From positions 1-64,000 of the IMG/VR virus record IMGVR_UViG_3300035145_003993: a stretch of 64,000 nt of DNA, one strand, 5' to 3'. Position numbers and translations under genes: made by a program. The notes below the pieces were generated by a model that worked only from the letters and a program-made list of their open reading frames with translations, did not search any database and was not told the DNA's origin. Below are positions 1 through 12,499 of the stretch, in pieces. How positions within the stretch are numbered: the stretch's first letter is position 1; every line of letters begins with the position of its first letter.

Positions 1-304
1 AGAATCACATGCAGGTCAAGTAGTTGAGTGCATCCCATCAGATGATGTAGTTTGTGAAGAAACCGTCGAAGAAACTGTTGAAGAAACTGTTGAAGAAACT
101 GTTGAAGGAGTAGAAGATGCAGGTCTTCCTGAAGAAGTAGAAGCTGGTGTAGAGGAATCTACTGAAGAACCTATTGAAGAAGTAGAAGCTGGTGTAGAGG
201 AATCTACTGAAGAACCTATTGAAGAAGTAGAAGCTGGTGATAATCAATCAGATTCTGGAGATCCAGAAATTGATCCTGCTCCTCAAGCTGGCGAGCCTGG
301 TTAA
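1..304 (+). CDS. 3' end of an acidic, repeat-rich protein (partial; missing from the ORF track)
   Basis: Frame 2 is open from nt 2 to TAA at 302-304: ESHAGQVVECIPSDDVVCEETVEETVEETVEETVEGVEDAGLPEEVEAGVEESTEEPIEEVEAGVEESTEEPIEEVEAGDNQSDSGDPEIDPAPQAGEPG*. Repeat units are multiples of 3. Confidence 0.85.
   Translation, partial: ESHAGQVVECIPSDDVVCEETVEETVEETVEETVEGVEDAGLPEEVEAGVEESTEEPIEEVEAGVEESTEEPIEEVEAGDNQSDSGDPEIDPAPQAGEPG
56..106 (+). repeat. 12-bp tandem repeat (GAAGAAACTGTT, about 4 copies, encodes EETV)
   Basis: Directly visible; the first copy is degenerate (gaagaaaccgtc). Confidence 0.9.
131..239 (+). repeat. 45-bp perfect tandem repeat, about 2.4 copies (EEVEAGVEESTEEPI)
   Basis: 131-175 is identical to 176-220, with a partial copy at 221-239. 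Confidence 0.95.
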
Positions 305-542
305 TATATTTTATTTTATTTTTGCGGTTTAACTGCTTAAATTTATATTCAATTTTTAAAGCGTTGGAGTGATCCAACGCTTTTTTTATATACACAAATC
401 GACATGGTCTTTTACTTCTCGTATATTTAGCTCCACCTTTAATAACACCATTATGCTGTTTTAATCTTCTTTCAAGATTTGTAGTTATACCGCAATAAAA
501 AGAATTGTCATTACAGATTAACACGTACATATACCATTTCAA
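216..542 (-). CDS. GIY-YIG nuclease, SLX1/UPF0213-like
   Basis: YMYVL..DNSFYCGITTNLERRLKQHN..GAKYTRSKRP..ALKIE motifs; TTG start with AGGAGG RBS at 550-555. Confidence 0.9.
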   Translation of the reverse strand: MKWYMYVLICNDNSFYCGITTNLERRLKQHNGVIKGGAKYTRSKRPCRFVYIKKALDHSNALKIEYKFKQLNRKNKIKYINQARQLEEQDQFLDLQNLIDYHQLLLLQ

Positions 543-2433: not shown

Positions 2434-4242
2434 TTAGATAATGTTCATATCAAGACATGTTACTGTACCGTAGAAATCAGCACGTACCATCTTCTTACCG
2501 TAACGAGTCATAACACCCTTACGTGGTGTGAAATCCTCTGGCTGGAAGATTGTAGGTGTAACGATCAATGGAACGTATGGAGCATAAACGAAACCAGTCT
2601 CTAGGTAAGAACCACCCTTATAACCAACAAGGATCTTGTTGCGTGGGAAGTATGGGTCTTTGTAAACTGTGAAACGATTACTTAGTGTACCAACTTTGTC
2701 TGCACCCATTGTGAAAGGAGCACCAACTTGACCATCACCATCAATGCTATAGCTTGGACGATAAAGAACAGAAGCTTCAAGGATTGTTGCAACATCAGGA
2801 GAAACTACGATGAAGTTAGCAGAACCACGAAGTGTCTTTCTGTGAATCTCATTAGCAACGTCAATAACAGTCTCAGTTAGAGTCTCATACCACTCACGAA
2901 CAGTACCAGTAAATGCTGGTCCAGGATTAAGTGTAGATGTACGCGCGATCTCAGCACCAGTACGCTTGTTAACAAACTTACCAGGTGAACGACTCCAGAA
3001 GAAGTTAGCACCTTGTGCACCATTTAGAAGATCTCCAAGAATCTCACGATCGATTTCAAGAGCGATTTGCTCAGAAAGAATCTGAGTAAGCTCAACCTCT
3101 GCATCCATTGAGTGGTATGCATTAAGGTCTTGTGCAAGCTCTGGACTCCAACGTGCTCTCAACTTGCGTGTTTGTGCTGTTACAGGGATTGACTCAATCT
3201 TAATATCAATCTCTGGAATTGCAGAAGGAGCATCAGTTGTTAGTAATGTCTGACCTTCCATTGCTGGATCAACATCTACACCACCAACACTATTTGCAAT
3301 ACCTTCAGCACCATCAGCTTCAACAAATTCAACAATGATACCATCAACATTACCACCATCAATTGTGAGTGCAGCAGTTGCAGGTACTGTAGCGTGAATC
3401 TGAACTAGGAAAAGAGCTCGATCTTGTACACCATTTGCATTAAGAGCACCAGCTTTGAAAGTTGCTAAAGTATCGCCAGTACCAACTTTAGTAACTTTTC
3501 TTACGTTGTGAGATAAACCACCTTGCAATTTTTGTGCCGCTGAAATTTGAACAGATTGAGCTGTTCCACCGTCATCCATAACTGCAGTTGCAGACTTAAT
3601 AAGAGAAAGATCAGCACCTGAAAGTTGAGTTGCATCTAACAATACAAATTGAAATGCTGATGTTGCTGCTGCGTCAATAACTTCTGAATCGTAATCGACT
3701 AGTGCAAGGTGAGTAGCATCAGTTGGATCAAATTTAGCAGTTGCTTGTACATTGCCATGTGCAACTGTTTCTGTTTTGTGCTCGCGAGAAAAACCGCTAC
3801 CTGCAAGATCATATTGACCACCAAGAGCATCAGCCCCACCTTGAATAGCCTTACCAGTAGGACCACCATAGATTGACTCAGTTGTTTGGTGAGGACCCTC
3901 TTGTGAACCGTATGTATAATCTAGATAAAATAGAAGACCACTTGGAAGACTCATTGGTTGAATTGAAACTAGTTCATTTGCAATAAGACCACCGAATACG
4001 CGACGAACGATTGGGAATGCAATGTTTGAGAAACCACCAACATCACCAGCATTCATTGTGCTGCTTTCGCGAAGAACTTGAGCAGCTTGATTCTCAAGAA
4101 GAGTAGCCATATTTTCGCGGTTTACATCATCCATACCACGAAGAAGACCAGTGCGAGACCATTTCTCAACGAGGCGCTTGTTTTGTTGGCCCACGTGGCG
4201 GTCTCTAATACCTTCAGTTAACTTTTGTAGTGTAAAACTCAT
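2434..4242 (-). CDS. gp23: major capsid protein, T4 gp23-like
   Basis: LVEKW..LLENQ, FPIVRRVF..ELVSIQPM..PSGLLFY, TRKLRARWSPELAQDLNAYH..DAEVELT..LSEQIALEIDREI, GFVYAPYVPL, FTPRKGVMTRY; AAGGA RBS. Confidence 0.98.
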   Translation of the reverse strand: MSFTLQKLTEGIRDRHVGQQNKRLVEKWSRTGLLRGMDDVNRENMATLLENQAAQVLRESSTMNAGDVGGFSNIAFPIVRRVFGGLIANELVSIQPMSLPSGLLFYLDYTYGSQEGPHQTTESIYGGPTGKAIQGGADALGGQYDLAGSGFSREHKTETVAHGNVQATAKFDPTDATHLALVDYDSEVIDAAATSAFQFVLLDATQLSGADLSLIKSATAVMDDGGTAQSVQISAAQKLQGGLSHNVRKVTKVGTGDTLATFKAGALNANGVQDRALFLVQIHATVPATAALTIDGGNVDGIIVEFVEADGAEGIANSVGGVDVDPAMEGQTLLTTDAPSAIPEIDIKIESIPVTAQTRKLRARWSPELAQDLNAYHSMDAEVELTQILSEQIALEIDREILGDLLNGAQGANFFWSRSPGKFVNKRTGAEIARTSTLNPGPAFTGTVREWYETLTETVIDVANEIHRKTLRGSANFIVVSPDVATILEASVLYRPSYSIDGDGQVGAPFTMGADKVGTLSNRFTVYKDPYFPRNKILVGYKGGSYLETGFVYAPYVPLIVTPTIFQPEDFTPRKGVMTRYGKKMVRADFYGTVTCLDMNII

Positions 4243-4282: not shown

Positions 4283-5800
4283 TTATTTTCTAATACCAGC
4301 AAGAGTTGCCCAACGATCAAGTGCTACAGATTCGTTAATTGGCTTTGCTTGACCACTACGAACTGAGTTTGAAGAAGAACTAGAAGATCTTCTTAGTGCA
4401 CCTTCAGATAGGTTACTATTACGGGATGCCTTACTACTTACAAGCGACTTTGAAAGACTTTCAAATAGAATCTTAGCCTCACCAATAGTCTTTGCTTCAT
4501 CAAGAGATTCAACAATGTTGCGTTGTTGCTTCATTGACAAATCACGATTTTGCATGAGTTTGTTAGCATAAAGTAACTTCGCGTTGAATAGGTTCATTTC
4601 TGAAAGATGAGTCTTCATTCCTTGAAGAGCCTCTTTGTATTGAGAAAGCTTGCTTTCTAGCATACGATTCGTGCGTACAACTTTTGCAGCTTTAGTTTTC
4701 ATCTCTTGAAGCTTGTCTACACCATCAACAAAAGCTTCACCTTCTTCAGAACCACCACCAAATTGTGAAGCTATATCTTTAGCTTCACCTTCACGAAGAG
4801 ATTTCATTCTACCAATCTCTCTTCTAAGCATATTTTCATCAATTTCTAAAACACGGTCAAAAGACTCAGCTATTTCTTCTGGGCCATCTTTAACTTCATC
4901 TTCATCTTCATCTAAGTGAGTTCCTTCATAAGCTTCTTTTTGCTCATGATCATCCTCAAACAAACCTTCAAGATTAAGTTCTTGTTGGCCAACATCTTCG
5001 TCTTCTTCTACAAGACCTGCCATGATAGCTAATTCTCTAACTGTCGTAAGATCTGTAACTTCGTCACCAGATTCTTCAGCTTCTTCAACTTCTTCAGCTT
5101 CTACTTCAGATTCTTCCTCATTTTCAGGTTTAGGATCTTCATCAGCAGCTAAAAGATCTGCGTCATCGTCTTCTTTTACTTCGTCAGCTTCGAAAAGATC
5201 AATCTCTAGGAGATCGTCAAAGCTTTCGTTAAGATACTTTTTGTTTGAGTGTCTACTAGACATATTCTCTAACTCCTTATTTAATTTATAAAATTCTTCT
5301 AAAAGTTCTTTGTTATTTCTAATTATACCGTTTTTGTTCAATTTTGCTATTTCATTAACTAAATTCTTATATAATACTATAATTCTAGGTTTATTTACGC
5401 TATATTTATCTGAACTTTCTGAAAGAATTATAGCTTTTTGTAAAGAGTTAATACTTTCTTTCAAATCAGATATTTTTTGTTTTGCAGCTTGAATTCTAGA
5501 ATTTTGACTAATTAATTTATTAAGAATTCTTCTAGATTCTTGATTAAGCTCAACAGGTTTTGAATCTTCTTGTTCAGTTTGTTCTTCTTTGACTTCATCT
5601 TGAGATTCTTCTTTAATAGATTCATATGAGCAATCATCTTGACTTGTTAATTCTTCATCTGATTCAAAAAGTTTTTTCTCTACCATAATTTTAATTTGTG
5701 GTGAAATAGACTCAATTATTTGTTGTTTTACTTTTTCTTCAGCAGATAACTTTATTTGTTCTGCTGCTTCAATTGCTTCGTTATATAATGTACTACTCAT
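4283..5800 (-). CDS. gp22: prohead core/scaffolding protein, gp22-like
   Basis: Immediately upstream of the major capsid gene; highly acidic coiled coil with many L/I-x-E sites; LSEMNLFNAKLLYANKL; C-terminus DRWATLAGIRK. Confidence 0.8.
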   Translation of the reverse strand: MSSTLYNEAIEAAEQIKLSAEEKVKQQIIESISPQIKIMVEKKLFESDEELTSQDDCSYESIKEESQDEVKEEQTEQEDSKPVELNQESRRILNKLISQNSRIQAAKQKISDLKESINSLQKAIILSESSDKYSVNKPRIIVLYKNLVNEIAKLNKNGIIRNNKELLEEFYKLNKELENMSSRHSNKKYLNESFDDLLEIDLFEADEVKEDDDADLLAADEDPKPENEEESEVEAEEVEEAEESGDEVTDLTTVRELAIMAGLVEEDEDVGQQELNLEGLFEDDHEQKEAYEGTHLDEDEDEVKDGPEEIAESFDRVLEIDENMLRREIGRMKSLREGEAKDIASQFGGGSEEGEAFVDGVDKLQEMKTKAAKVVRTNRMLESKLSQYKEALQGMKTHLSEMNLFNAKLLYANKLMQNRDLSMKQQRNIVESLDEAKTIGEAKILFESLSKSLVSSKASRNSNLSEGALRRSSSSSSNSVRSGQAKPINESVALDRWATLAGIRK

Positions 5801-5812
5801 ATTTAAAACCTG

Positions 5813-5820
5813 TATTTATA
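5813..5820 (-). promoter_or_regulatory. T4-type late promoter TATAAATA upstream of scaffold/capsid genes
   Basis: Exact T4 late consensus in the 33-bp gap. It lies only 12 nt from the ATG, so the leader would be very short. Confidence 0.4.
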
Positions 5821-5833
5821 TAATTTATATATT

Positions 5834-6709
5834 CTATAATTTTTTATTTTTGTTTAAAACATTATATTTATCATTAAAATTTTGATTTGTTGTTTGTAAC
5901 AATATATCAAAAGATGATAAATCTTCGTCATAAAAATCATCAATAAGTATTTCTGAGGATGAAGATTTAACAGTTTCTGCACCGTCAGTTGTACCTTTCA
6001 TTGGAACTTTAACATGTCCATGAGGAGTTTTAATATAAACATTGATTTCTTCTTGATCATGTCCTTTATAATTAAAACCATGTCTACCTTTAGGGAGATG
6101 GCCAACAGGAGCAGCATCTGCTGTATTTGTTGATACATTCATGTTTTTATAAATACTATCTTTTCCAGTAGATCTAACAACAATATTACCACTAATTTGG
6201 TTACCTCTTTCAGACAATATTAATTCTTCAATATATTCCTTAAGACTGTTTTCTAACAATTTGTTTCCTTTAACTTCGTAACCGGCTGATAATCCTATTA
6301 CACCTGCAATACTATTTCCTAAACCACCTAAACTTGAAATGTCTGTTCCTCTATGTGCTAAGGAATCTGTTGCTCTTCTTTGAAAAGATGTATGAGCTTT
6401 TGACTCAATATCTGCATCTAATTCATCATATGGATTGTCTGCTTCAGTTTCTATTAGACCTGCTAAAATTGCTAATTCTCTAACTGTTGTATTAGAAGTT
6501 ATTTGTATTATTTCTTGTTTGTCTTCTGGAATTTCATAATCATATTCTCCTTTTGGAGAACTTAATGCATCACCCATATTCCAGTTTCTACCAATACCAC
6601 TATTAGGATCACCACCTAAAGACCCTATACTTAAACCTGTCCTACTGTCATAATTAAATGATCCACCGAATGAGTTAGGATTTGAATTAGAAAAAGTAGG
6701 ACTAGTCAT
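5834..6709 (-). CDS. hypothetical head-module protein sharing the TTVRELAIxAGLxE motif with the scaffold
   Basis: 291-aa ORF with AAGGA RBS; motif is 12/14 aa identical to the scaffold copy. Confidence 0.8.
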   Translation of the reverse strand: MTSPTFSNSNPNSFGGSFNYDSRTGLSIGSLGGDPNSGIGRNWNMGDALSSPKGEYDYEIPEDKQEIIQITSNTTVRELAILAGLIETEADNPYDELDADIESKAHTSFQRRATDSLAHRGTDISSLGGLGNSIAGVIGLSAGYEVKGNKLLENSLKEYIEELILSERGNQISGNIVVRSTGKDSIYKNMNVSTNTADAAPVGHLPKGRHGFNYKGHDQEEINVYIKTPHGHVKVPMKGTTDGAETVKSSSSEILIDDFYDEDLSSFDILLQTTNQNFNDKYNVLNKNKKL

Positions 6710-7691: not shown

Positions 7692-8117
7692 TTATTTCTC
7701 AGAAAAAGCTAAGTTTGCCCATTTGTCTGCTGAACCTGAAAACATCTCCATAGGATCAGACTCGTTTACAACTTGACTATATGTATCAGATGGTTTTGCT
7801 GTAAATTGATTTGGTCTATCAGCACCATTTTGCTCTTGTAAAGTTGTTTTTGCAGTATCTTGAAGAATTGATGCCATTATTGGATCACTTGTTGTTTGAG
7901 ATATTATTTTATTTGTATTGTCTTCAAATTTTTCGTTTACTATTTTTTTAGATATTTGTGAAGACATTGTATCTTGTTTAAAATTATTTGCAGAATTTGT
8001 TGAAATAAGACTTTCATTTAATGAAGATGTATCTCCACCACTAAGACCTTCAGCTAACAGTTCTACTAAACACTCTTTTACAATGCTCTTAAGCATACTT
8101 CTACTTACTTTTGCCAT
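7692..8117 (-). CDS. hypothetical head-module protein with a scaffold-like C-terminus
   Basis: N-terminus MAKVSRSMLKSIVKECLVELLAE; C-terminus DKWANLAFSEK resembles scaffold DRWATLAGIRK. Confidence 0.8.
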   Translation of the reverse strand: MAKVSRSMLKSIVKECLVELLAEGLSGGDTSSLNESLISTNSANNFKQDTMSSQISKKIVNEKFEDNTNKIISQTTSDPIMASILQDTAKTTLQEQNGADRPNQFTAKPSDTYSQVVNESDPMEMFSGSADKWANLAFSEK

Positions 8118-8122
8118 ATTAA

Positions 8123-8671
8123 TTAATCACCTAAAAATGTTTCTACAACTTCTGTAAATTCTGATCTGTCGATTGATGTTAATCCTACAATTATTTTTCC
8201 ATTTTGTTTTGTATCAAAATATAGATTTGTACATCTTATTTCAAGTTGACTAGAACTAGAAGTAAATGTTAAAAAATTATCTAAAAGAATATCAGTTCTT
8301 GAAAAGGCTACATCTATACCATCACCTGTTGGTAAAAATTGAATCCATCTAGATATTTTTGGTAGTTTTAAAGTTTTTACTTCAACCAAGGTAAAACCTG
8401 CTTTTAAATTGTTTGCCTTTTTTTCGCTATCTTGAATTACTCCATCACCGCTAGTATCAGTAAATATATCTGTATCTGGAACAACACCATGTGTATGAAC
8501 AAAACCATTATTTGTCTCTGAGTGTCCTACAACAGCAGAATTATCATTTTTTTTGACAAAAAATGTACTAACTAGATCTGATGAAAGATCTACGACATAC
8601 GGTATAGAACTAATTTGGTATTCTGGAGTAAAATTATGACCTACTGATCTTGGGATATGAGATATCGACAT
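8123..8671 (-). CDS. beta-rich hypothetical protein, tandem paralogue B (possible capsid decoration protein)
   Basis: MSISHIPRSVGHNFTPEYQISSIPY...GLTSIDRSEFTEVVETFL; paralogous to the next gene. Confidence 0.8.
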   Translation of the reverse strand: MSISHIPRSVGHNFTPEYQISSIPYVVDLSSDLVSTFFVKKNDNSAVVGHSETNNGFVHTHGVVPDTDIFTDTSGDGVIQDSEKKANNLKAGFTLVEVKTLKLPKISRWIQFLPTGDGIDVAFSRTDILLDNFLTFTSSSSQLEIRCTNLYFDTKQNGKIIVGLTSIDRSEFTEVVETFLGD

Positions 8672-9084
8672 TAAGGTTGTCCTTCCAAGAATGTTTCTAC
8701 TACAGAAGTAAATTCTGATCTGTCTATAGCTGTTAGACCTGCTAATATTTCTAACGTTTTCCCATCATCAACATCGTTAAAATATAAATTAACACATCTA
8801 ATATGTAAAGGATATGTCCTATTCGTATCTAAAGTCATCCCATTACTACCAGCTGCAGCGTCTTTAGCACTAAAATAAACGGAAAGAATAGCATCAGCTT
8901 TAAATTGAAGCCACTGTGTTATTTTAGGAAATTCAACAACATAAACTGTACTACCGTTTACAGTTAAAGGAGAATTATTGTCATAGGTATTAATCACACC
9001 ATCTCTTGTATAAGGAATAGCACTAATTTGATATTCAGGTAAAAAATTATGACCTACTGATCTTGGAATATGTGATATTGCCAT
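8671..9084 (-). CDS. beta-rich hypothetical protein, tandem paralogue A
   Basis: Start at ATG 9084 (TAATG overlap with the gp21 stop) aligns with the paralogue: MAISHIPRSVGHNFLPEYQISAIPY...GLTAIDRSEFTSVVETFL. Confidence 0.8.
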   Translation of the reverse strand: MAISHIPRSVGHNFLPEYQISAIPYTRDGVINTYDNNSPLTVNGSTVYVVEFPKITQWLQFKADAILSVYFSAKDAAAGSNGMTLDTNRTYPLHIRCVNLYFNDVDDGKTLEILAGLTAIDRSEFTSVVETFLEGQP

Positions 9085-9686
9085 TATTTCCACTCCATTA
9101 TGTCATTAAATATTCTATCTATTCTGTCTGTTTTGTTAAATACGTTATTTATAAACTGGGGAGAAACTTCTTTTCCTTCTTTCATCATAAACGCACCAGG
9201 AGTTGAAGGCTCACTTACAAAATCCCAACAAATAAGTTGAAAATCATCTTGTACAATTTGCATATCACCTTGAATTTTTGTACTTCCAACGCCTCTAGAA
9301 GAAATTCCTAATGTTACTCCACTTTCAACTAATGATTGTAATATTTTTCCACTAGGAGTATTAAGAATTTCAACTACACCATAGACAATATTACCTTCCA
9401 TATACGCTTGTTTAATATTATGTGAAGCATTTTTTAATTCAACAACAGAAGAATCTGGATGGTCTAGTTCACCTAAAGCTCTATTTTCTTTAATAAACTT
9501 TTGATAATTTCTTATTTCTCTTTCTAGAATATTCCTTGGATAAACTCTTCCATTCTGATTTAAAGTTTCAGCTTTTTGTAAAATACCTTTCATGATTAAA
9601 GGCTTACCTAGATCTTTTTGTTCTTTAATTAATTTAGGATCGTATTCAAAATTAACCCATTCTGTAATAAGTCTTTGAGCACCCAT
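9084..9686 (-). CDS. gp21: prohead protease, T4 gp21-like
   Basis: GILQKAETLNQNGRVYP, ALGELDHP, ASHNI, TPSGKIL, LGISSRGVGS, DFVSEPSTPGA. Confidence 0.97.
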   Translation of the reverse strand: MGAQRLITEWVNFEYDPKLIKEQKDLGKPLIMKGILQKAETLNQNGRVYPRNILEREIRNYQKFIKENRALGELDHPDSSVVELKNASHNIKQAYMEGNIVYGVVEILNTPSGKILQSLVESGVTLGISSRGVGSTKIQGDMQIVQDDFQLICWDFVSEPSTPGAFMMKEGKEVSPQFINNVFNKTDRIDRIFNDIMEWK

Positions 9687-9687
9687 T

Positions 9688-10518
9688 TTATTCTCCTGAT
9701 ATTTCTTCTTTTAATTTTCCGATTGTTAAAAATCTTTGAAGATTTTCTTTTGACATATCATTACAATCTAAATCTTTAATGTTATTAACAACAAAGCTAT
9801 ATTTTTCATTTAAAATTTGATTGTTACAATCACTAATATAATTTTCAAGAATATTAATACAAGATATTTTTATTGCATTATATTTATTTGAAAGAGAATC
9901 TTCATTGTCTTTTATAAAAAAAGATATCATTTCTCTTTGCGATTCATTTAATTTAGAGTTATATTTTTTCTCAAACATTTCATTCATAATCTTATATGTA
10001 AGAGAATCAACTTTTTTTGGAATAATATTTTCTTTTATTAATTCTTTTTTACTAGTTAAGCTTTCATGTAATTTAATTTCATATTCAGTTACTTTGTCAA
10101 AACTTGGATTTTTATTTCTCCATTCATTCAACAAAGTCTGAATTGTTGCATATGTTCTATAATTTTTAATTTTTCCTTCGAAAATATTGCCTTTTCCAAA
10201 AGTATAGTTTAAGTCTTTAATTAAAAAGGATTTTTCTTCTTCTAATTTTTTATTATCAAACATATGATTACAAGCTTTTTTAGCTTCATTAATAATTGAA
10301 GTAGCTAAAGTTTCTGAAACATTGGAAGTTTCAGAAAGAGCTTTAAAAAGTTTATATTCTTTAAATAATTGTGTATCTTGCTTAAAATTTTTCTTTATTA
10401 TATTAATTGCAAGTTCGGCGCTTTTTTTATCATCTTCCATTAGTCTTTCACAAACAAAGTTTATAATTTGTTCATATATTATACCAATGTTTCTTTTTTT
10501 ATTATGATTCTTCGCCAT
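9688..10518 (-). CDS. helical head-assembly protein between portal and protease (prohead-core position)
   Basis: Probable start ATG 10518 (MAKNHNKKRNIG). It occupies the slot of T4 gp67/gp68 and carries several L/I-x-E sites. Confidence 0.75.
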   Translation of the reverse strand: MAKNHNKKRNIGIIYEQIINFVCERLMEDDKKSAELAINIIKKNFKQDTQLFKEYKLFKALSETSNVSETLATSIINEAKKACNHMFDNKKLEEEKSFLIKDLNYTFGKGNIFEGKIKNYRTYATIQTLLNEWRNKNPSFDKVTEYEIKLHESLTSKKELIKENIIPKKVDSLTYKIMNEMFEKKYNSKLNESQREMISFFIKDNEDSLSNKYNAIKISCINILENYISDCNNQILNEKYSFVVNNIKDLDCNDMSKENLQRFLTIGKLKEEISGE

Positions 10519-12499
10519 TGTTATCTTCCTTGTTTTCAAACATATCATCGTCTATAATTATATCAAAATCTTTGTCATTATTTTCTTTTAATAACTTATT
10601 TTTACTTAAATTTAAAGAATTAGACATTTTTTCTAAATCTTTTGACATTCTATAAGAAAGTTGTCTATCTACAAAATCATTAATTAAAGGACTTTGTGGA
10701 AGAATATTATCTGATAGTGAAGATCTAAAAACATCTTCAGAATTTGCTATTTTTATAGGCTTATTTATTCCACTACCTGATGATAAACCTGGTAAAGTTG
10801 TTTGTGACTTTCCTTTTTTTGATCCTTTTCTTTTAAATTTCCCTCTAGTTTTAGAAACTTTAGAATCAGCTTGGACAGGGTTTTCTTTATCTGGATCAAA
10901 AATATCTTTAGAGTCAAATTCTATTAAGTCATCAAACTCAGATAGATCTTTTTCTGTCATTATATTATTACCTTTTATTTCTCCTGAAAATAGATCTGAA
11001 ACAGGAGATTCATCTTCAACATCTGGGGCAGATGCTCCAGATCCAATGTCACCAGAAGACTGATCTGAGTCATCACCAAATATATCATCTTCAGTTTCTG
11101 GTAATTGTAAACCTTCAAGCTCCATTTCTCGGATTTTATCTTTTTCTCTTCCCATTTCAATTCTTGTAATTTCATCATCATTTAAATCAAGAATATGTTT
11201 TCTAATCCATTCTCTATCAACAAAACCTTCAGGAGCTCCTCCTGCTATTTCAAATTTGGTTCTTATTAACTCCAGTTTTTGTTGTTGAGCAATACTTGAT
11301 GGATTACATAATTTTAATTCAAAGTCTAATATAGATTCATCTGTATATCCGTGTGAATATAAATGAATCATTGCAATTTTATTTAATTCTGAAACTATTG
11401 TTTTTTGTATTCTTTGAATTGTTCTACTAAATCTAACATCTTCTTGAGCTAATGTAGCTTTTGATCCAATATCTTCATCATATCCAAGATATGCTTTTGG
11501 AATTTTAAGAGCTGCAAAAAGTTTCTTTTGAATATATTCAACATCTTCAATAGCTGTTGTATTTGATCCACCAGCCAAAGTATCAATTCTAGTTCCACTT
11601 TCTCCACCTCTTACTGGAAGGAAATAATCTTCATCAACTGATAGTGGATTATATCTTAAATCAACTTGTCCAGTATTTTTATCTACAACAGCATTTCTTT
11701 TTAAAGAAGATTGAGCTTGTTCAAGATAATCGGAAATATTTTCTGGAGGAATATTACCAACATCAATATAAAAAACTCTTCTTTCTGGAGATCTAATTAC
11801 TCTATATACAAGCATTGCATCTTCAATAAGAATTAGCTGACGCCAGACTCTTCGAGCACCTTCTAAAACAGAAGATCCATATGGTAAAAAAGCATCACTT
11901 CCTAAAAGTCTAAAATGAGACACTTGCCAATTTTCTAAAACCCTATTTCCTTGAGTTACCCATCTAAATCTTACAGCCCCTGGATCATTTGGATCAAAAC
12001 CTTCTTCTCTTTCTATTTCTGATATTGGTATTGGAAAAACGTTAACGACACCAAATTCAGGATGAATATCATTAAAAAGAAAAAAGTCTCCATATTTACA
12101 TAAATTTCTAACCCACATAGAAAGATTAAAATCTATATTAAGCGTATCATAAAATAATTCATCTAATATTTTTTTAATCATTCTATTTTCAGAGTAAATA
12201 TTTAAAATATTACCTTCTACATCAGGTGAAGCACATTCTTCAGAGTATATATCTAAAGCAGAAGAAATCTCTGGAGTTCCTTCCATCTCTGAAAAATCAG
12301 AATATCTTGACATTCTATCATATGATCCATAGGCTCTTAAAGTACTATTGTAAACATCACTATGTGCTTTTTTAAATACTTCTAAAGAAGATTTAGAGTA
12401 AGACTCTTTATCTTGTATCTTTTTAATTCTTCTTTTAACTACAGGACCTGATCTAAAAAGGTCTGTTAATTTTTTAAATAAATTATTATTTTCTGCCAT
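10502..12499 (-). CDS. gp20: portal protein, T4 gp20-like, with long charged C-terminal extension
   Basis: PEISSALDIYSEE, QLILIEDAMLVYRVIRSPERRVFYIDVGNIP, EDYFLPVRGGESGTRIDTLAGG, IEDVEYIQKKLFAALKIP. Confidence 0.97.
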   Translation of the reverse strand: MAENNNLFKKLTDLFRSGPVVKRRIKKIQDKESYSKSSLEVFKKAHSDVYNSTLRAYGSYDRMSRYSDFSEMEGTPEISSALDIYSEECASPDVEGNILNIYSENRMIKKILDELFYDTLNIDFNLSMWVRNLCKYGDFFLFNDIHPEFGVVNVFPIPISEIEREEGFDPNDPGAVRFRWVTQGNRVLENWQVSHFRLLGSDAFLPYGSSVLEGARRVWRQLILIEDAMLVYRVIRSPERRVFYIDVGNIPPENISDYLEQAQSSLKRNAVVDKNTGQVDLRYNPLSVDEDYFLPVRGGESGTRIDTLAGGSNTTAIEDVEYIQKKLFAALKIPKAYLGYDEDIGSKATLAQEDVRFSRTIQRIQKTIVSELNKIAMIHLYSHGYTDESILDFELKLCNPSSIAQQQKLELIRTKFEIAGGAPEGFVDREWIRKHILDLNDDEITRIEMGREKDKIREMELEGLQLPETEDDIFGDDSDQSSGDIGSGASAPDVEDESPVSDLFSGEIKGNNIMTEKDLSEFDDLIEFDSKDIFDPDKENPVQADSKVSKTRGKFKRKGSKKGKSQTTLPGLSSGSGINKPIKIANSEDVFRSSLSDNILPQSPLINDFVDRQLSYRMSKDLEKMSNSLNLSKNKLLKENNDKDFDIIIDDDMFENKEDNNGEES

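What the first reader, a model, noticed from the sequence alone, without database searches (positions are those of the whole stretch)
5006..6490. 14-aa motif duplicated between the scaffold and its upstream neighbour
Seen: TTVRELAIMAGLVE (5006-5047, inside the disordered acidic middle of gp22) and TTVRELAILAGLIE (6449-6490) match at 12/14 aa and 35/42 nt, while their flanks are unrelated. It echoes the scaffold C-terminus RWATLAGI. Inference: a portable docking helix (R..LA..AG[LI]) copied between genes, letting the 291-aa orphan bind the same site as the scaffold.
Basis: partly seen in the sequence, partly recalled or inferred. Interest (0 to 1): 0.72.

Follow-up and report, generated by a model that had tools for sequence, protein, structure and literature searches.

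The report
Shared docking helix in phage head-core proteins
Two neighbouring head-assembly genes of a marine T4-like phage carry the same short helix, kept in many related phages and lost together, so it is probably a docking tag that loads a second protein into the scaffolding core, although binding itself is not shown.

Summary
TTVRELAIMAGLVE (scaffold aa 252-265, 5006-5047, minus strand) and TTVRELAILAGLIE (291-aa protein aa 74-87, 6449-6490) match at 12/14 aa and 35/42 nt. They are the only such copies in the 211-kb genome.

It is not a one-off. The 291-aa protein is not an orphan: it has 113 metagenomic homologues and sits in a fixed portal-to-capsid gene order. In it the motif is an insertion/deletion cassette, present in about half of the homologues at one position.

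In the scaffold the helix is ancestral. Even distant scaffolds carry an analogous helix in their acidic middle.

Among 42 distinct paired loci:
- 22 have the canonical motif in both genes.
- 14 have it in neither.
- 6 have it in the scaffold only.
- None has it in the 291-aa protein only.

Only 3-4 phylogenetically independent contrasts exist, so this coupling is suggestive, not proven.

AlphaFold2 models both copies as isolated short helices inside disordered acidic stretches. Invariant residues use several different codons, so selection acts on the protein.

The most likely role is a docking helix for co-assembly into the prohead core, analogous to the T4 capsid-targeting sequence. The partner is unknown, and the complex prediction gave no verdict.

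The parts
5006..5047 (-). Scaffold copy of the motif, TTVRELAIMAGLVE (aa 252-265). A short helix inside the acidic disordered middle.
   Evidence: AlphaFold2 helix 254-260, block pLDDT 79, flanks below 50. Canonical form in 28 of 42 distinct scaffolds.
6449..6490 (-). Copy in the 291-aa protein, TTVRELAILAGLIE (aa 74-87). An insertion/deletion cassette in an acidic linker.
   Evidence: AlphaFold2 helix 76-82, the best-confidence block (78) of a mostly disordered protein.
4283..5800 (-). Scaffold-like protein (505 aa), directly upstream of the major capsid protein gene. Long helices, an acidic disordered middle and an invariant C-terminal tail.
   Evidence: Homologous to the protein upstream of the MCP gene in Flavobacterium phage immuto (hhalign probability 98.4%). 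No detectable homology to T4 gp22. No Pfam hit.
5834..6709 (-). 291-aa conserved head-module protein (p291), mostly disordered, function unknown.
   Evidence: 113 homologues. Fixed synteny in all loci. No Pfam, PHROG, PDB or Atlas assignment.
4286..4318 (-). Scaffold C-terminal tail DRWATLAGIRK, a second short helix resembling the motif (A-x-L-A-G-[LI]).
   Evidence: R-W-A-x-L-A-G-[IL] is present at the C-terminus of nearly all scaffold relatives seen, including distant ones and phage immuto. AlphaFold2 helix 490-500.
7692..8117 (-). 141-aa head-module protein with a related C-terminal tail, KWANLAFSEK (WANLAF at 7704-7721).
   Evidence: The tail N/K-W-A-x-L-A-F-S is nearly invariant in more than 50 loci.
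9084..9686 (-). Prohead protease (T4 gp21 type, Peptidase_S77). This is context: both window copies of the motif end in L-x-E.
   Evidence: Pfam PF03420, 1.2e-28. PHROG 207.
2434..4242 (-). Major capsid protein (T4 gp23 family), a candidate partner of the scaffold tails.
   Evidence: Pfam PF07068, 5e-80. Its N-terminal 112 residues are almost invariant in 14 relatives.

Best explanation
The motif is a short, capped amphipathic helix, of the kind that folds on binding, embedded in acidic disordered sequence. Its consensus is [IV]-x-x-x-T-[TS]-V-x-[ED]-L-A-x-x-A-G-[LI]-[IVLM]. It is an old feature of this scaffold family's middle region. In one sub-lineage it was copied into the linker of the adjacent, largely disordered 291-aa head protein. 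The copy most likely lets that protein use the interaction made by the scaffold's own helix, so that it is co-assembled into the prohead core. The interaction could be pairing with the scaffold helix itself, or binding to whatever that helix binds. This is functionally analogous to the T4 capsid-targeting sequence. The conserved face is V3, L6, A7, A10, G11 and L12. Positions 4, 5, 8 and 9 vary, as expected for a helix that docks by one face built of small residues.

Shown: the duplication, its conservation, its cassette nature, its nested co-occurrence, the predicted helix within disorder, and selection at the protein level.

Inferred: that it is a binding element, what it binds, and that it serves incorporation into the core.
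For: 1. The motif is conserved at one position in about half of the 113 p291 homologues and cleanly absent in the rest.
2. The canonical motif is present in 28 of 42 distinct scaffolds. All other scaffolds, including 30%-identical ones, have an analogous helix at the same place, for example ALEDLGAALGLD or MTVEELGDLVSG. The scaffold copy is therefore the ancestral one.
3. Co-occurrence is nested: 22 loci have both, 6 scaffold only, 14 neither, and none p291 only. In all four lineages where the scaffold helix diverged, the p291 cassette is deleted or degenerate.
4. Two lineages (L005, L027) show the same unusual flavour, DL-x-x-M-[ST]-[VI], in both genes. Motifs within a genome are slightly more alike than motifs between genomes (permutation p 0.025).
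5. Motif columns are 74-78% pairwise identical, against 18-20% in the flanks. Invariant L, A and G residues use 3-4 different codons each.
6. There are exactly two copies per genome in four genomes and none in the control scans.
7. AlphaFold2 gives isolated confident helices in otherwise disordered regions of both proteins.
8. The genes lie in a strictly syntenic T4-type head module between protease and capsid genes.
9. There is precedent. In T4, a conserved roughly 10-aa signal shared by otherwise diverse internal proteins targets them into the scaffolding core (PMC3012670, PMC9958956).
Against: No physical interaction was shown: the one complex prediction (MCP + scaffold 225-300 + p291 55-110) scored 0.00 and gives no verdict. 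The co-occurrence rests on only 3-4 independent contrasts (sign test p at least 0.25). The two sites are 1.4 kb apart, so a single recombination could carry both states. Covariation among canonical pairs is weak, and each gene keeps its own flavour. Many homologues of p291 do without the cassette, so it is dispensable for whatever the protein mainly does. The motif detection used a regular expression, which makes the conservation figures partly circular.
Confidence: 0.5

Rival explanations
1. The motif is chiefly a recognition and cleavage site for the gp21-type prohead protease. Both window copies end in L-x-E, the T4 protease consensus as I recall it. On this view the shared sequence marks where both proteins are cut during maturation.
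For: A Peptidase_S77 protease is encoded in the module. Both window copies end G-L-[IV]-E. T4 gp21 degrades gp22, gp67 and gp68 and trims internal proteins after their targeting peptide (PMC9958956). The scaffold is rich in [LI]-x-E (24 sites).
Against: The residue at the would-be P1 position (motif position 14) is only 34-36% conserved; D, G, Q, S, N and K all occur there. The upstream helix residues are 80-100% conserved. A cleavage site needs 3-4 residues, not a 13-residue capped helix. [LI]-x-E is common in these acidic proteins anyway.
Confidence: 0.12
2. The p291 copy is a passenger of local recombination or gene conversion between adjacent genes. It persists by linkage and mild constraint, without a function tied to the scaffold helix. 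The apparent co-occurrence reflects shared ancestry and the 1.4-kb linkage.
For: The sites are 1.44 kb apart on one strand. The window clade has unusually similar copies (35/42 nt, a 17-nt exact run). Independent contrasts are too few for significance. Many p291 homologues lack the cassette.
Against: The cassette is kept in p291 across lineages only 35-60% identical overall, with synonymous codon turnover at invariant residues and 74% motif identity against 18% in the flanks. Codon identity between the two copies of one genome is low in most genomes, for example 2 of 9 in L005, so conversion is not ongoing. The four motif-less scaffold lineages each carry a different replacement sequence, which argues for separate events.
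Confidence: 0.13
3. The internal helices and the C-terminal tails (RWATLAGI on the scaffold, WANLAF on the 141-aa protein) are all versions of one capsid-protein-binding peptide. [quoted passage not shown] This is the reader's version.
For: All share the pattern A-x-L-A-G/F preceded by a hydrophobic residue. Its only three matches in the genome's ORFs are the two motifs and the scaffold tail. The tails are predicted helices in disorder, as the motif is. Scaffold C-termini bind coat protein in other phages (general knowledge, for example P22).
Against: The tails and the MCP N-terminal 112 residues are invariant in all lineages, but the internal helix changes form or is lost in several. A site shared with the invariant tail would not predict that, nor the coupling of the p291 cassette to the scaffold's internal helix specifically. 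The pattern was defined after the fact. The complex prediction that included the MCP gave no verdict.
Confidence: 0.2

Closest known systems
T4 capsid-targeting sequence (CTS) of internal proteins IPII and IPIII (Mullaney and Black 1996, as reviewed in PMC3012670 and PMC9958956)
   Same: A short peptide (about 10-14 aa) shared by otherwise unrelated proteins of a T4-type prohead core. It is proposed to direct them into the scaffolding core. In the window both copies end in a protease-type L-x-E, as the CTS does by my recollection.
   Different: The CTS is N-terminal and is cleaved off; here the motif is internal (aa 74-87 and 252-265). Here one of the two carriers is the major scaffold itself. 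I did not compare it with the CTS sequence. The cleavage residue is not conserved. Targeting activity is untested.
C-terminal coat-binding helices of phage and herpesvirus scaffolding proteins (for example the P22 gp8 C-terminal helix-turn-helix; general knowledge)
   Same: A small helical element at the end of a flexible region that mediates the scaffold's contacts. This family has such a tail (RWAxLAGI), which resembles the motif.
   Different: The finding's motif is internal, variable between lineages and duplicated into another protein. No coat binding is shown.
Scaffold-like protein of Flavobacterium phage vB_FspM_immuto (annotated 'DNA polymerase phi-like protein', MW353176.1)
   Same: It is homologous over the C-terminal 110 aa, including the tail SRWQKLAGIIK (hhalign probability 98.4%). 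It has the same position upstream of the MCP gene, and an acidic middle with a helix-like segment MSIDDLKDLIRDIV.
   Different: It lacks the canonical T-T-V-x-E-L-A-x-x-A-G-L form, and the phage has no p291 homologue between protease and scaffold.

Membership tests
T4 capsid-targeting sequence (CTS) | Short conserved peptide shared by otherwise unrelated prohead-core proteins | tested here: met
   Only the 32-aa stretch aligns between the two proteins (E 4e-6). It is conserved in both gene families.
T4 capsid-targeting sequence (CTS) | Located at the extreme N-terminus of the cargo protein | tested here: not met
   The motif lies at aa 74-87 of 291 and aa 252-265 of 505.
T4 capsid-targeting sequence (CTS) | Ends in a prohead-protease site and is removed on maturation | tested here: inconclusive
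   The window copies end L-I-E and L-V-E, but position 14 is only 34-36% conserved across relatives. Cleavage cannot be tested here.
T4 capsid-targeting sequence (CTS) | Sufficient to carry a foreign protein into the core | not testable with these tools
   This needs fusion-protein incorporation assays. The complex prediction gave no verdict.
T4 gp22 major scaffold (prohead core protein) | Sequence homology to T4 gp22 | tested here: not met
   hhalign of the scaffold profile against T4 gp22: probability 0.3%. No Pfam or informative PHROG hit.
T4 gp22 major scaffold (prohead core protein) | Gene between the prohead protease and major capsid protein genes; helical, acidic protein | tested here: met
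   Gene order protease ... scaffold, MCP. AlphaFold2 predicts long helices and an acidic disordered middle. T4 gp22 also ends with aromatic-A-x-hydrophobic-A-small (YAKVASRF).
T4-type head module (gp20 / gp21 / gp23) | Portal_T4, Peptidase_S77 and Gp23 domains in one module | tested here: met
   Pfam PF07230 4.6e-77, PF03420 1.2e-28, PF07068 5.1e-80.

The most novel reading that the evidence does not exclude
This lineage of T4-like phages uses an internal targeting signal that mimics the scaffold's own mid-region helix. A cargo protein would join the prohead core by pairing its copy of the helix with the scaffold's. The linker of p291 would be a swappable slot, holding the helix, a Cys-rich insert or nothing, that sets how or whether the protein is loaded. 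That would be a second class of core-localisation signal, mechanistically distinct from the N-terminal T4 CTS.
Probability: 0.3. Interest if true: 0.65.

Novelty: new variant of a known kind. Interest (0 to 1): 0.5.

Why it matters
A recent T4 head review states that how proteins are localised to the scaffolding core 'remains mysterious' and that the core structure is unresolved (PMC9958956). This finding gives a defined 14-18-aa element that can be mutated. It is shared by the major scaffold and one accessory protein, and nature has already removed or altered it in several lineages. It is therefore a concrete handle for testing core co-assembly in a widespread marine T4-like lineage, and possibly a tag for loading cargo into such capsids. 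It also shows that the '291-aa orphan' is a conserved member of the head module.

Tried and rejected
- **Complex prediction** (MCP + scaffold 225-300 + p291 55-110): score 0.00, no verdict. It counts neither for nor against binding.
- **Database searches for p291:** Pfam, PHROGs, a PDB profile search and the ESM Atlas gave nothing usable. tblastn and blastn against 50,697 phage records found no p291 relative.
- **Scaffold profile against T4 gp22:** no homology. The PDB profile search gave only a chance-level hit.
- **DNA- or RNA-level element:** rejected, because invariant residues are encoded by 3-4 different codons across relatives, and codon identity between the two copies of one genome is mostly low.
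- **Chance or low-complexity match:** rejected (E 4e-6; conservation).
- **Ongoing gene conversion:** not supported outside the window clade.
- **Phylogenetically corrected co-occurrence test:** only 3-4 independent contrasts, p at least 0.25, so I do not claim significance.
- **Resemblance to the first helix and turn of HTH_17/MerR-type DNA-binding domains:** this is my recollection and was not tested. I set it aside because the rest of such a domain is missing and acidic disordered sequence follows.
- **T4 internal-protein genes:** I looked for them to compare the CTS sequence, but the regions I fetched did not contain them, so that comparison was not made.

Full report
**1. What is there**

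The window is the first 64 kb of a 211,364-bp phage genome. Bases 2.4-12.5 kb, on the minus strand, hold a T4-type head module:
- portal (Portal_T4), 10502-12499
- a 286-aa ORF
- prohead protease (Peptidase_S77), 9084-9686
- two paralogous ORFs of 140 and 182 aa
- ORFs of 141, 95 and 189 aa
- the 291-aa ORF, 5834-6709
- a 505-aa acidic ORF, 4283-5800
- major capsid protein (Gp23 family), 2434-4242

TTVRELAIMAGLVE is scaffold aa 252-265 (5006-5047). TTVRELAILAGLIE is aa 74-87 of the 291-aa protein, here called p291 (6449-6490). They match at 12/14 aa and 35/42 nt. BLASTP aligns the two proteins only here (E 4e-6). A six-frame scan of the whole genome finds no third copy.

**2. It is not a one-off, and p291 is not an orphan**

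p291 has 113 homologues in metagenomes, down to about 30% identity. The gene order portal, p286, protease, p140/p182, p141, p95, p189, p291, scaffold, MCP is kept in every related contig long enough to show it.

In the p291 alignment the motif behaves as a cassette. About half of the homologues carry [IV]xxxT[TS]Vx[ED]LAxxAG[LI][IVL] at one position in an acidic linker. The rest have a clean deletion, a degenerate version (MTIQRLSVLI) or a Cys-rich insert.

Among carriers, motif columns are 74-78% pairwise identical and ungapped flanks 18-20%. That figure is partly circular, because carriers were picked by a pattern, but searches show the same without one. Invariant L, A and G residues are encoded by 3-4 different codons across genomes. 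The constraint is therefore on the protein, not on the DNA or RNA.

**3. The scaffold copy is the older one**

The canonical form is present in 28 of 42 distinct complete scaffolds. The others have a different helix-like segment at the same alignment position: MTVEELGDLVSG, ALRDIVTRAEEAL, SAKDLANELDKLSG or MSFREVVDAALSG.

Scaffolds only 30-45% identical, from 80 further loci, again carry an analogous element in their acidic middle, such as ALEDLGAALGLD or AIEQLAGAVGM. So does the cultured Flavobacterium phage immuto (MSIDDLKDLIRDIV), whose protein is homologous over the C-terminal part (hhalign probability 98.4%).

A mid-region helix is therefore a family trait of the scaffold. The p291 cassette is a lineage-restricted addition.

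**4. Coupling between the two genes**

| Canonical motif in | Distinct paired loci |
|---|---|
| Both genes | 22 |
| Scaffold only | 6 |
| Neither gene | 14 |
| p291 only | 0 |

The further loci add only 'neither' cases.

I built a tree from both proteins with the motif regions removed. On it the scaffold state changes 4 times and the p291 state 5 times. Wherever the scaffold helix left the canonical form, the p291 cassette is absent or degenerate.

The conservative independent-contrast test has only 3-4 contrasts. All go the same way, but p is at least 0.25, so this is suggestive only.

Two lineages (L005, L027) show the same unusual prefix, DLxxM[ST][VI], in both genes. Across canonical pairs, similarity within a genome barely exceeds similarity between genomes (9.67 against 9.23 of 18 positions, permutation p 0.025, uncorrected for phylogeny). 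Each gene otherwise keeps its own flavour:
- p291: R/K at position 4, F at 9, I at 13
- scaffold: E at 4, M at 8-9

Codon identity between the two copies of one genome is mostly low, so conversion is not continuous. The window clade (WIN, L025, L001) is the exception: its scaffold copy looks p291-like.

Three related large contigs also have exactly two copies each, a motif-less lineage has none, and control patterns give none.

**5. Structure**

AlphaFold2 models p291 as largely disordered (mean pLDDT 54). The motif is its most confident block (78, helix 76-82).

The scaffold is modelled as long helices (2-49, 87-185, 322-458) around a disordered acidic middle (186-319). An island of confidence sits at the motif (79, helix 254-260), and a short C-terminal helix follows at 490-500.

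The conserved positions V3, L6, A7, A10, G11 and L12 fall on one helical face built of small residues, with T-T as a likely N-cap and G as a C-cap. Positions 4, 5, 8 and 9 vary. This is the anatomy of a docking helix that folds on binding.

**6. Mechanism**

The best reading is as follows. The scaffold's mid-region helix makes an assembly contact. p291 acquired a copy and uses the same contact to be taken into the prohead core.

The partner is not identified. I lean towards the scaffold itself (helix-helix pairing), or a variable partner, rather than the capsid protein. The MCP N-terminal 112 residues and the scaffold tail RWAxLAG[IL] are invariant in all lineages, whereas the internal helix changes or is lost. 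An invariant site would not predict that.

A pure protease-site role is unlikely, because the P1-equivalent residue is only 34-36% conserved. The window's own copies do end in L-x-E and may well be cut there.

**7. Comparison with what is known**

The nearest functional analogue is the T4 capsid-targeting sequence. It is a roughly 10-aa N-terminal peptide shared by internal proteins, and it localises them, and foreign fusions, to the scaffolding core (PMC3012670, PMC9958956). The present motif shares the logic but fails the N-terminal criterion, and its targeting activity is untested.

The 505-aa protein is a scaffold by position, composition and predicted architecture. It shows no detectable homology to T4 gp22. 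T4 gp22 does end in a comparable aromatic-A-x-hydrophobic-A-small tail, YAKVASRF.

The pattern A-x-hydrophobic-A-G-[LI] occurs three times in the genome's ORFs, all in these two genes. It is a pattern chosen after the fact, though, and does not show a shared binding site.

**8. Verdict**

This is a conserved, modular, probably interaction-mediating helix shared by the scaffold and a neighbouring core protein, with nested co-occurrence. It is a new variant of the known idea of core-targeting peptides in T4-like phages.

No interaction is demonstrated, and the phylogenetic evidence for coupling is thin, so interest is moderate.

Noticed in passing
window 4286-4318 (-) and 7692-7724 (-); L088:7725-8966: Near-invariant C-terminal tails. 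The scaffold ends in R-W-A-x-L-A-G-[IL] in all loci seen, including 30%-identical scaffolds and the cultured Flavobacterium phage immuto. The 141-aa protein ends in N/K-W-A-x-L-A-F-S. T4 gp22 ends YAKVASRF. These are probably the capsid- or core-anchoring tails of this family.
   Followed up: partly
window 5834-6709 (-), protein aa about 58-97; proteins P0093-P0110, L079: The p291 linker is a slot with alternative contents across homologues: the helix motif, a Cys-rich C-G-C...C-D-C insert, a degenerate MTIQRLSVLI version, or a plain acidic deletion.
   Followed up: partly
window about 4955-4984 (-), scaffold aa 273-282: A second short motif, L-x-L-E-G-L-F-E-x-D, lies about 10 aa downstream of the helix. 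It is kept in nearly all scaffolds of the aligned close relatives, including those that lost the canonical helix.
   Followed up: no
window 8123-8671 (-) and 8671-9093 (-): Tandem paralogues of 182 and 140 aa, sharing the N-terminus ISHIPRSVGHNF.PEYQIS.IPY, lie between the protease and the 141-aa gene. Related loci carry one or two such genes of variable length.
   Followed up: no
window 7692-8117 (-): The N-terminus of the 141-aa protein (MAKVSRSMLKSIVKECLVELLAEGL) is almost invariant across more than 50 loci and contains two L-x-E sites. The length matches T4 gp68 (141 aa), but no similarity was tested.
   Followed up: no
window 2434-4242 (-): The major capsid protein is nearly invariant among 14 relatives, except for a hypervariable insertion at roughly aa 150-330. 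Total length ranges from 602 to 666 aa.
   Followed up: no
window 2-304 (+) and 216-542 (-): An open-ended acidic ORF with tandem peptide repeats (VEET and EEVEAGVEESTEEPIE units). On the opposite strand is a 108-aa ORF that looks like a GIY-YIG nuclease domain by eye.
   Followed up: no
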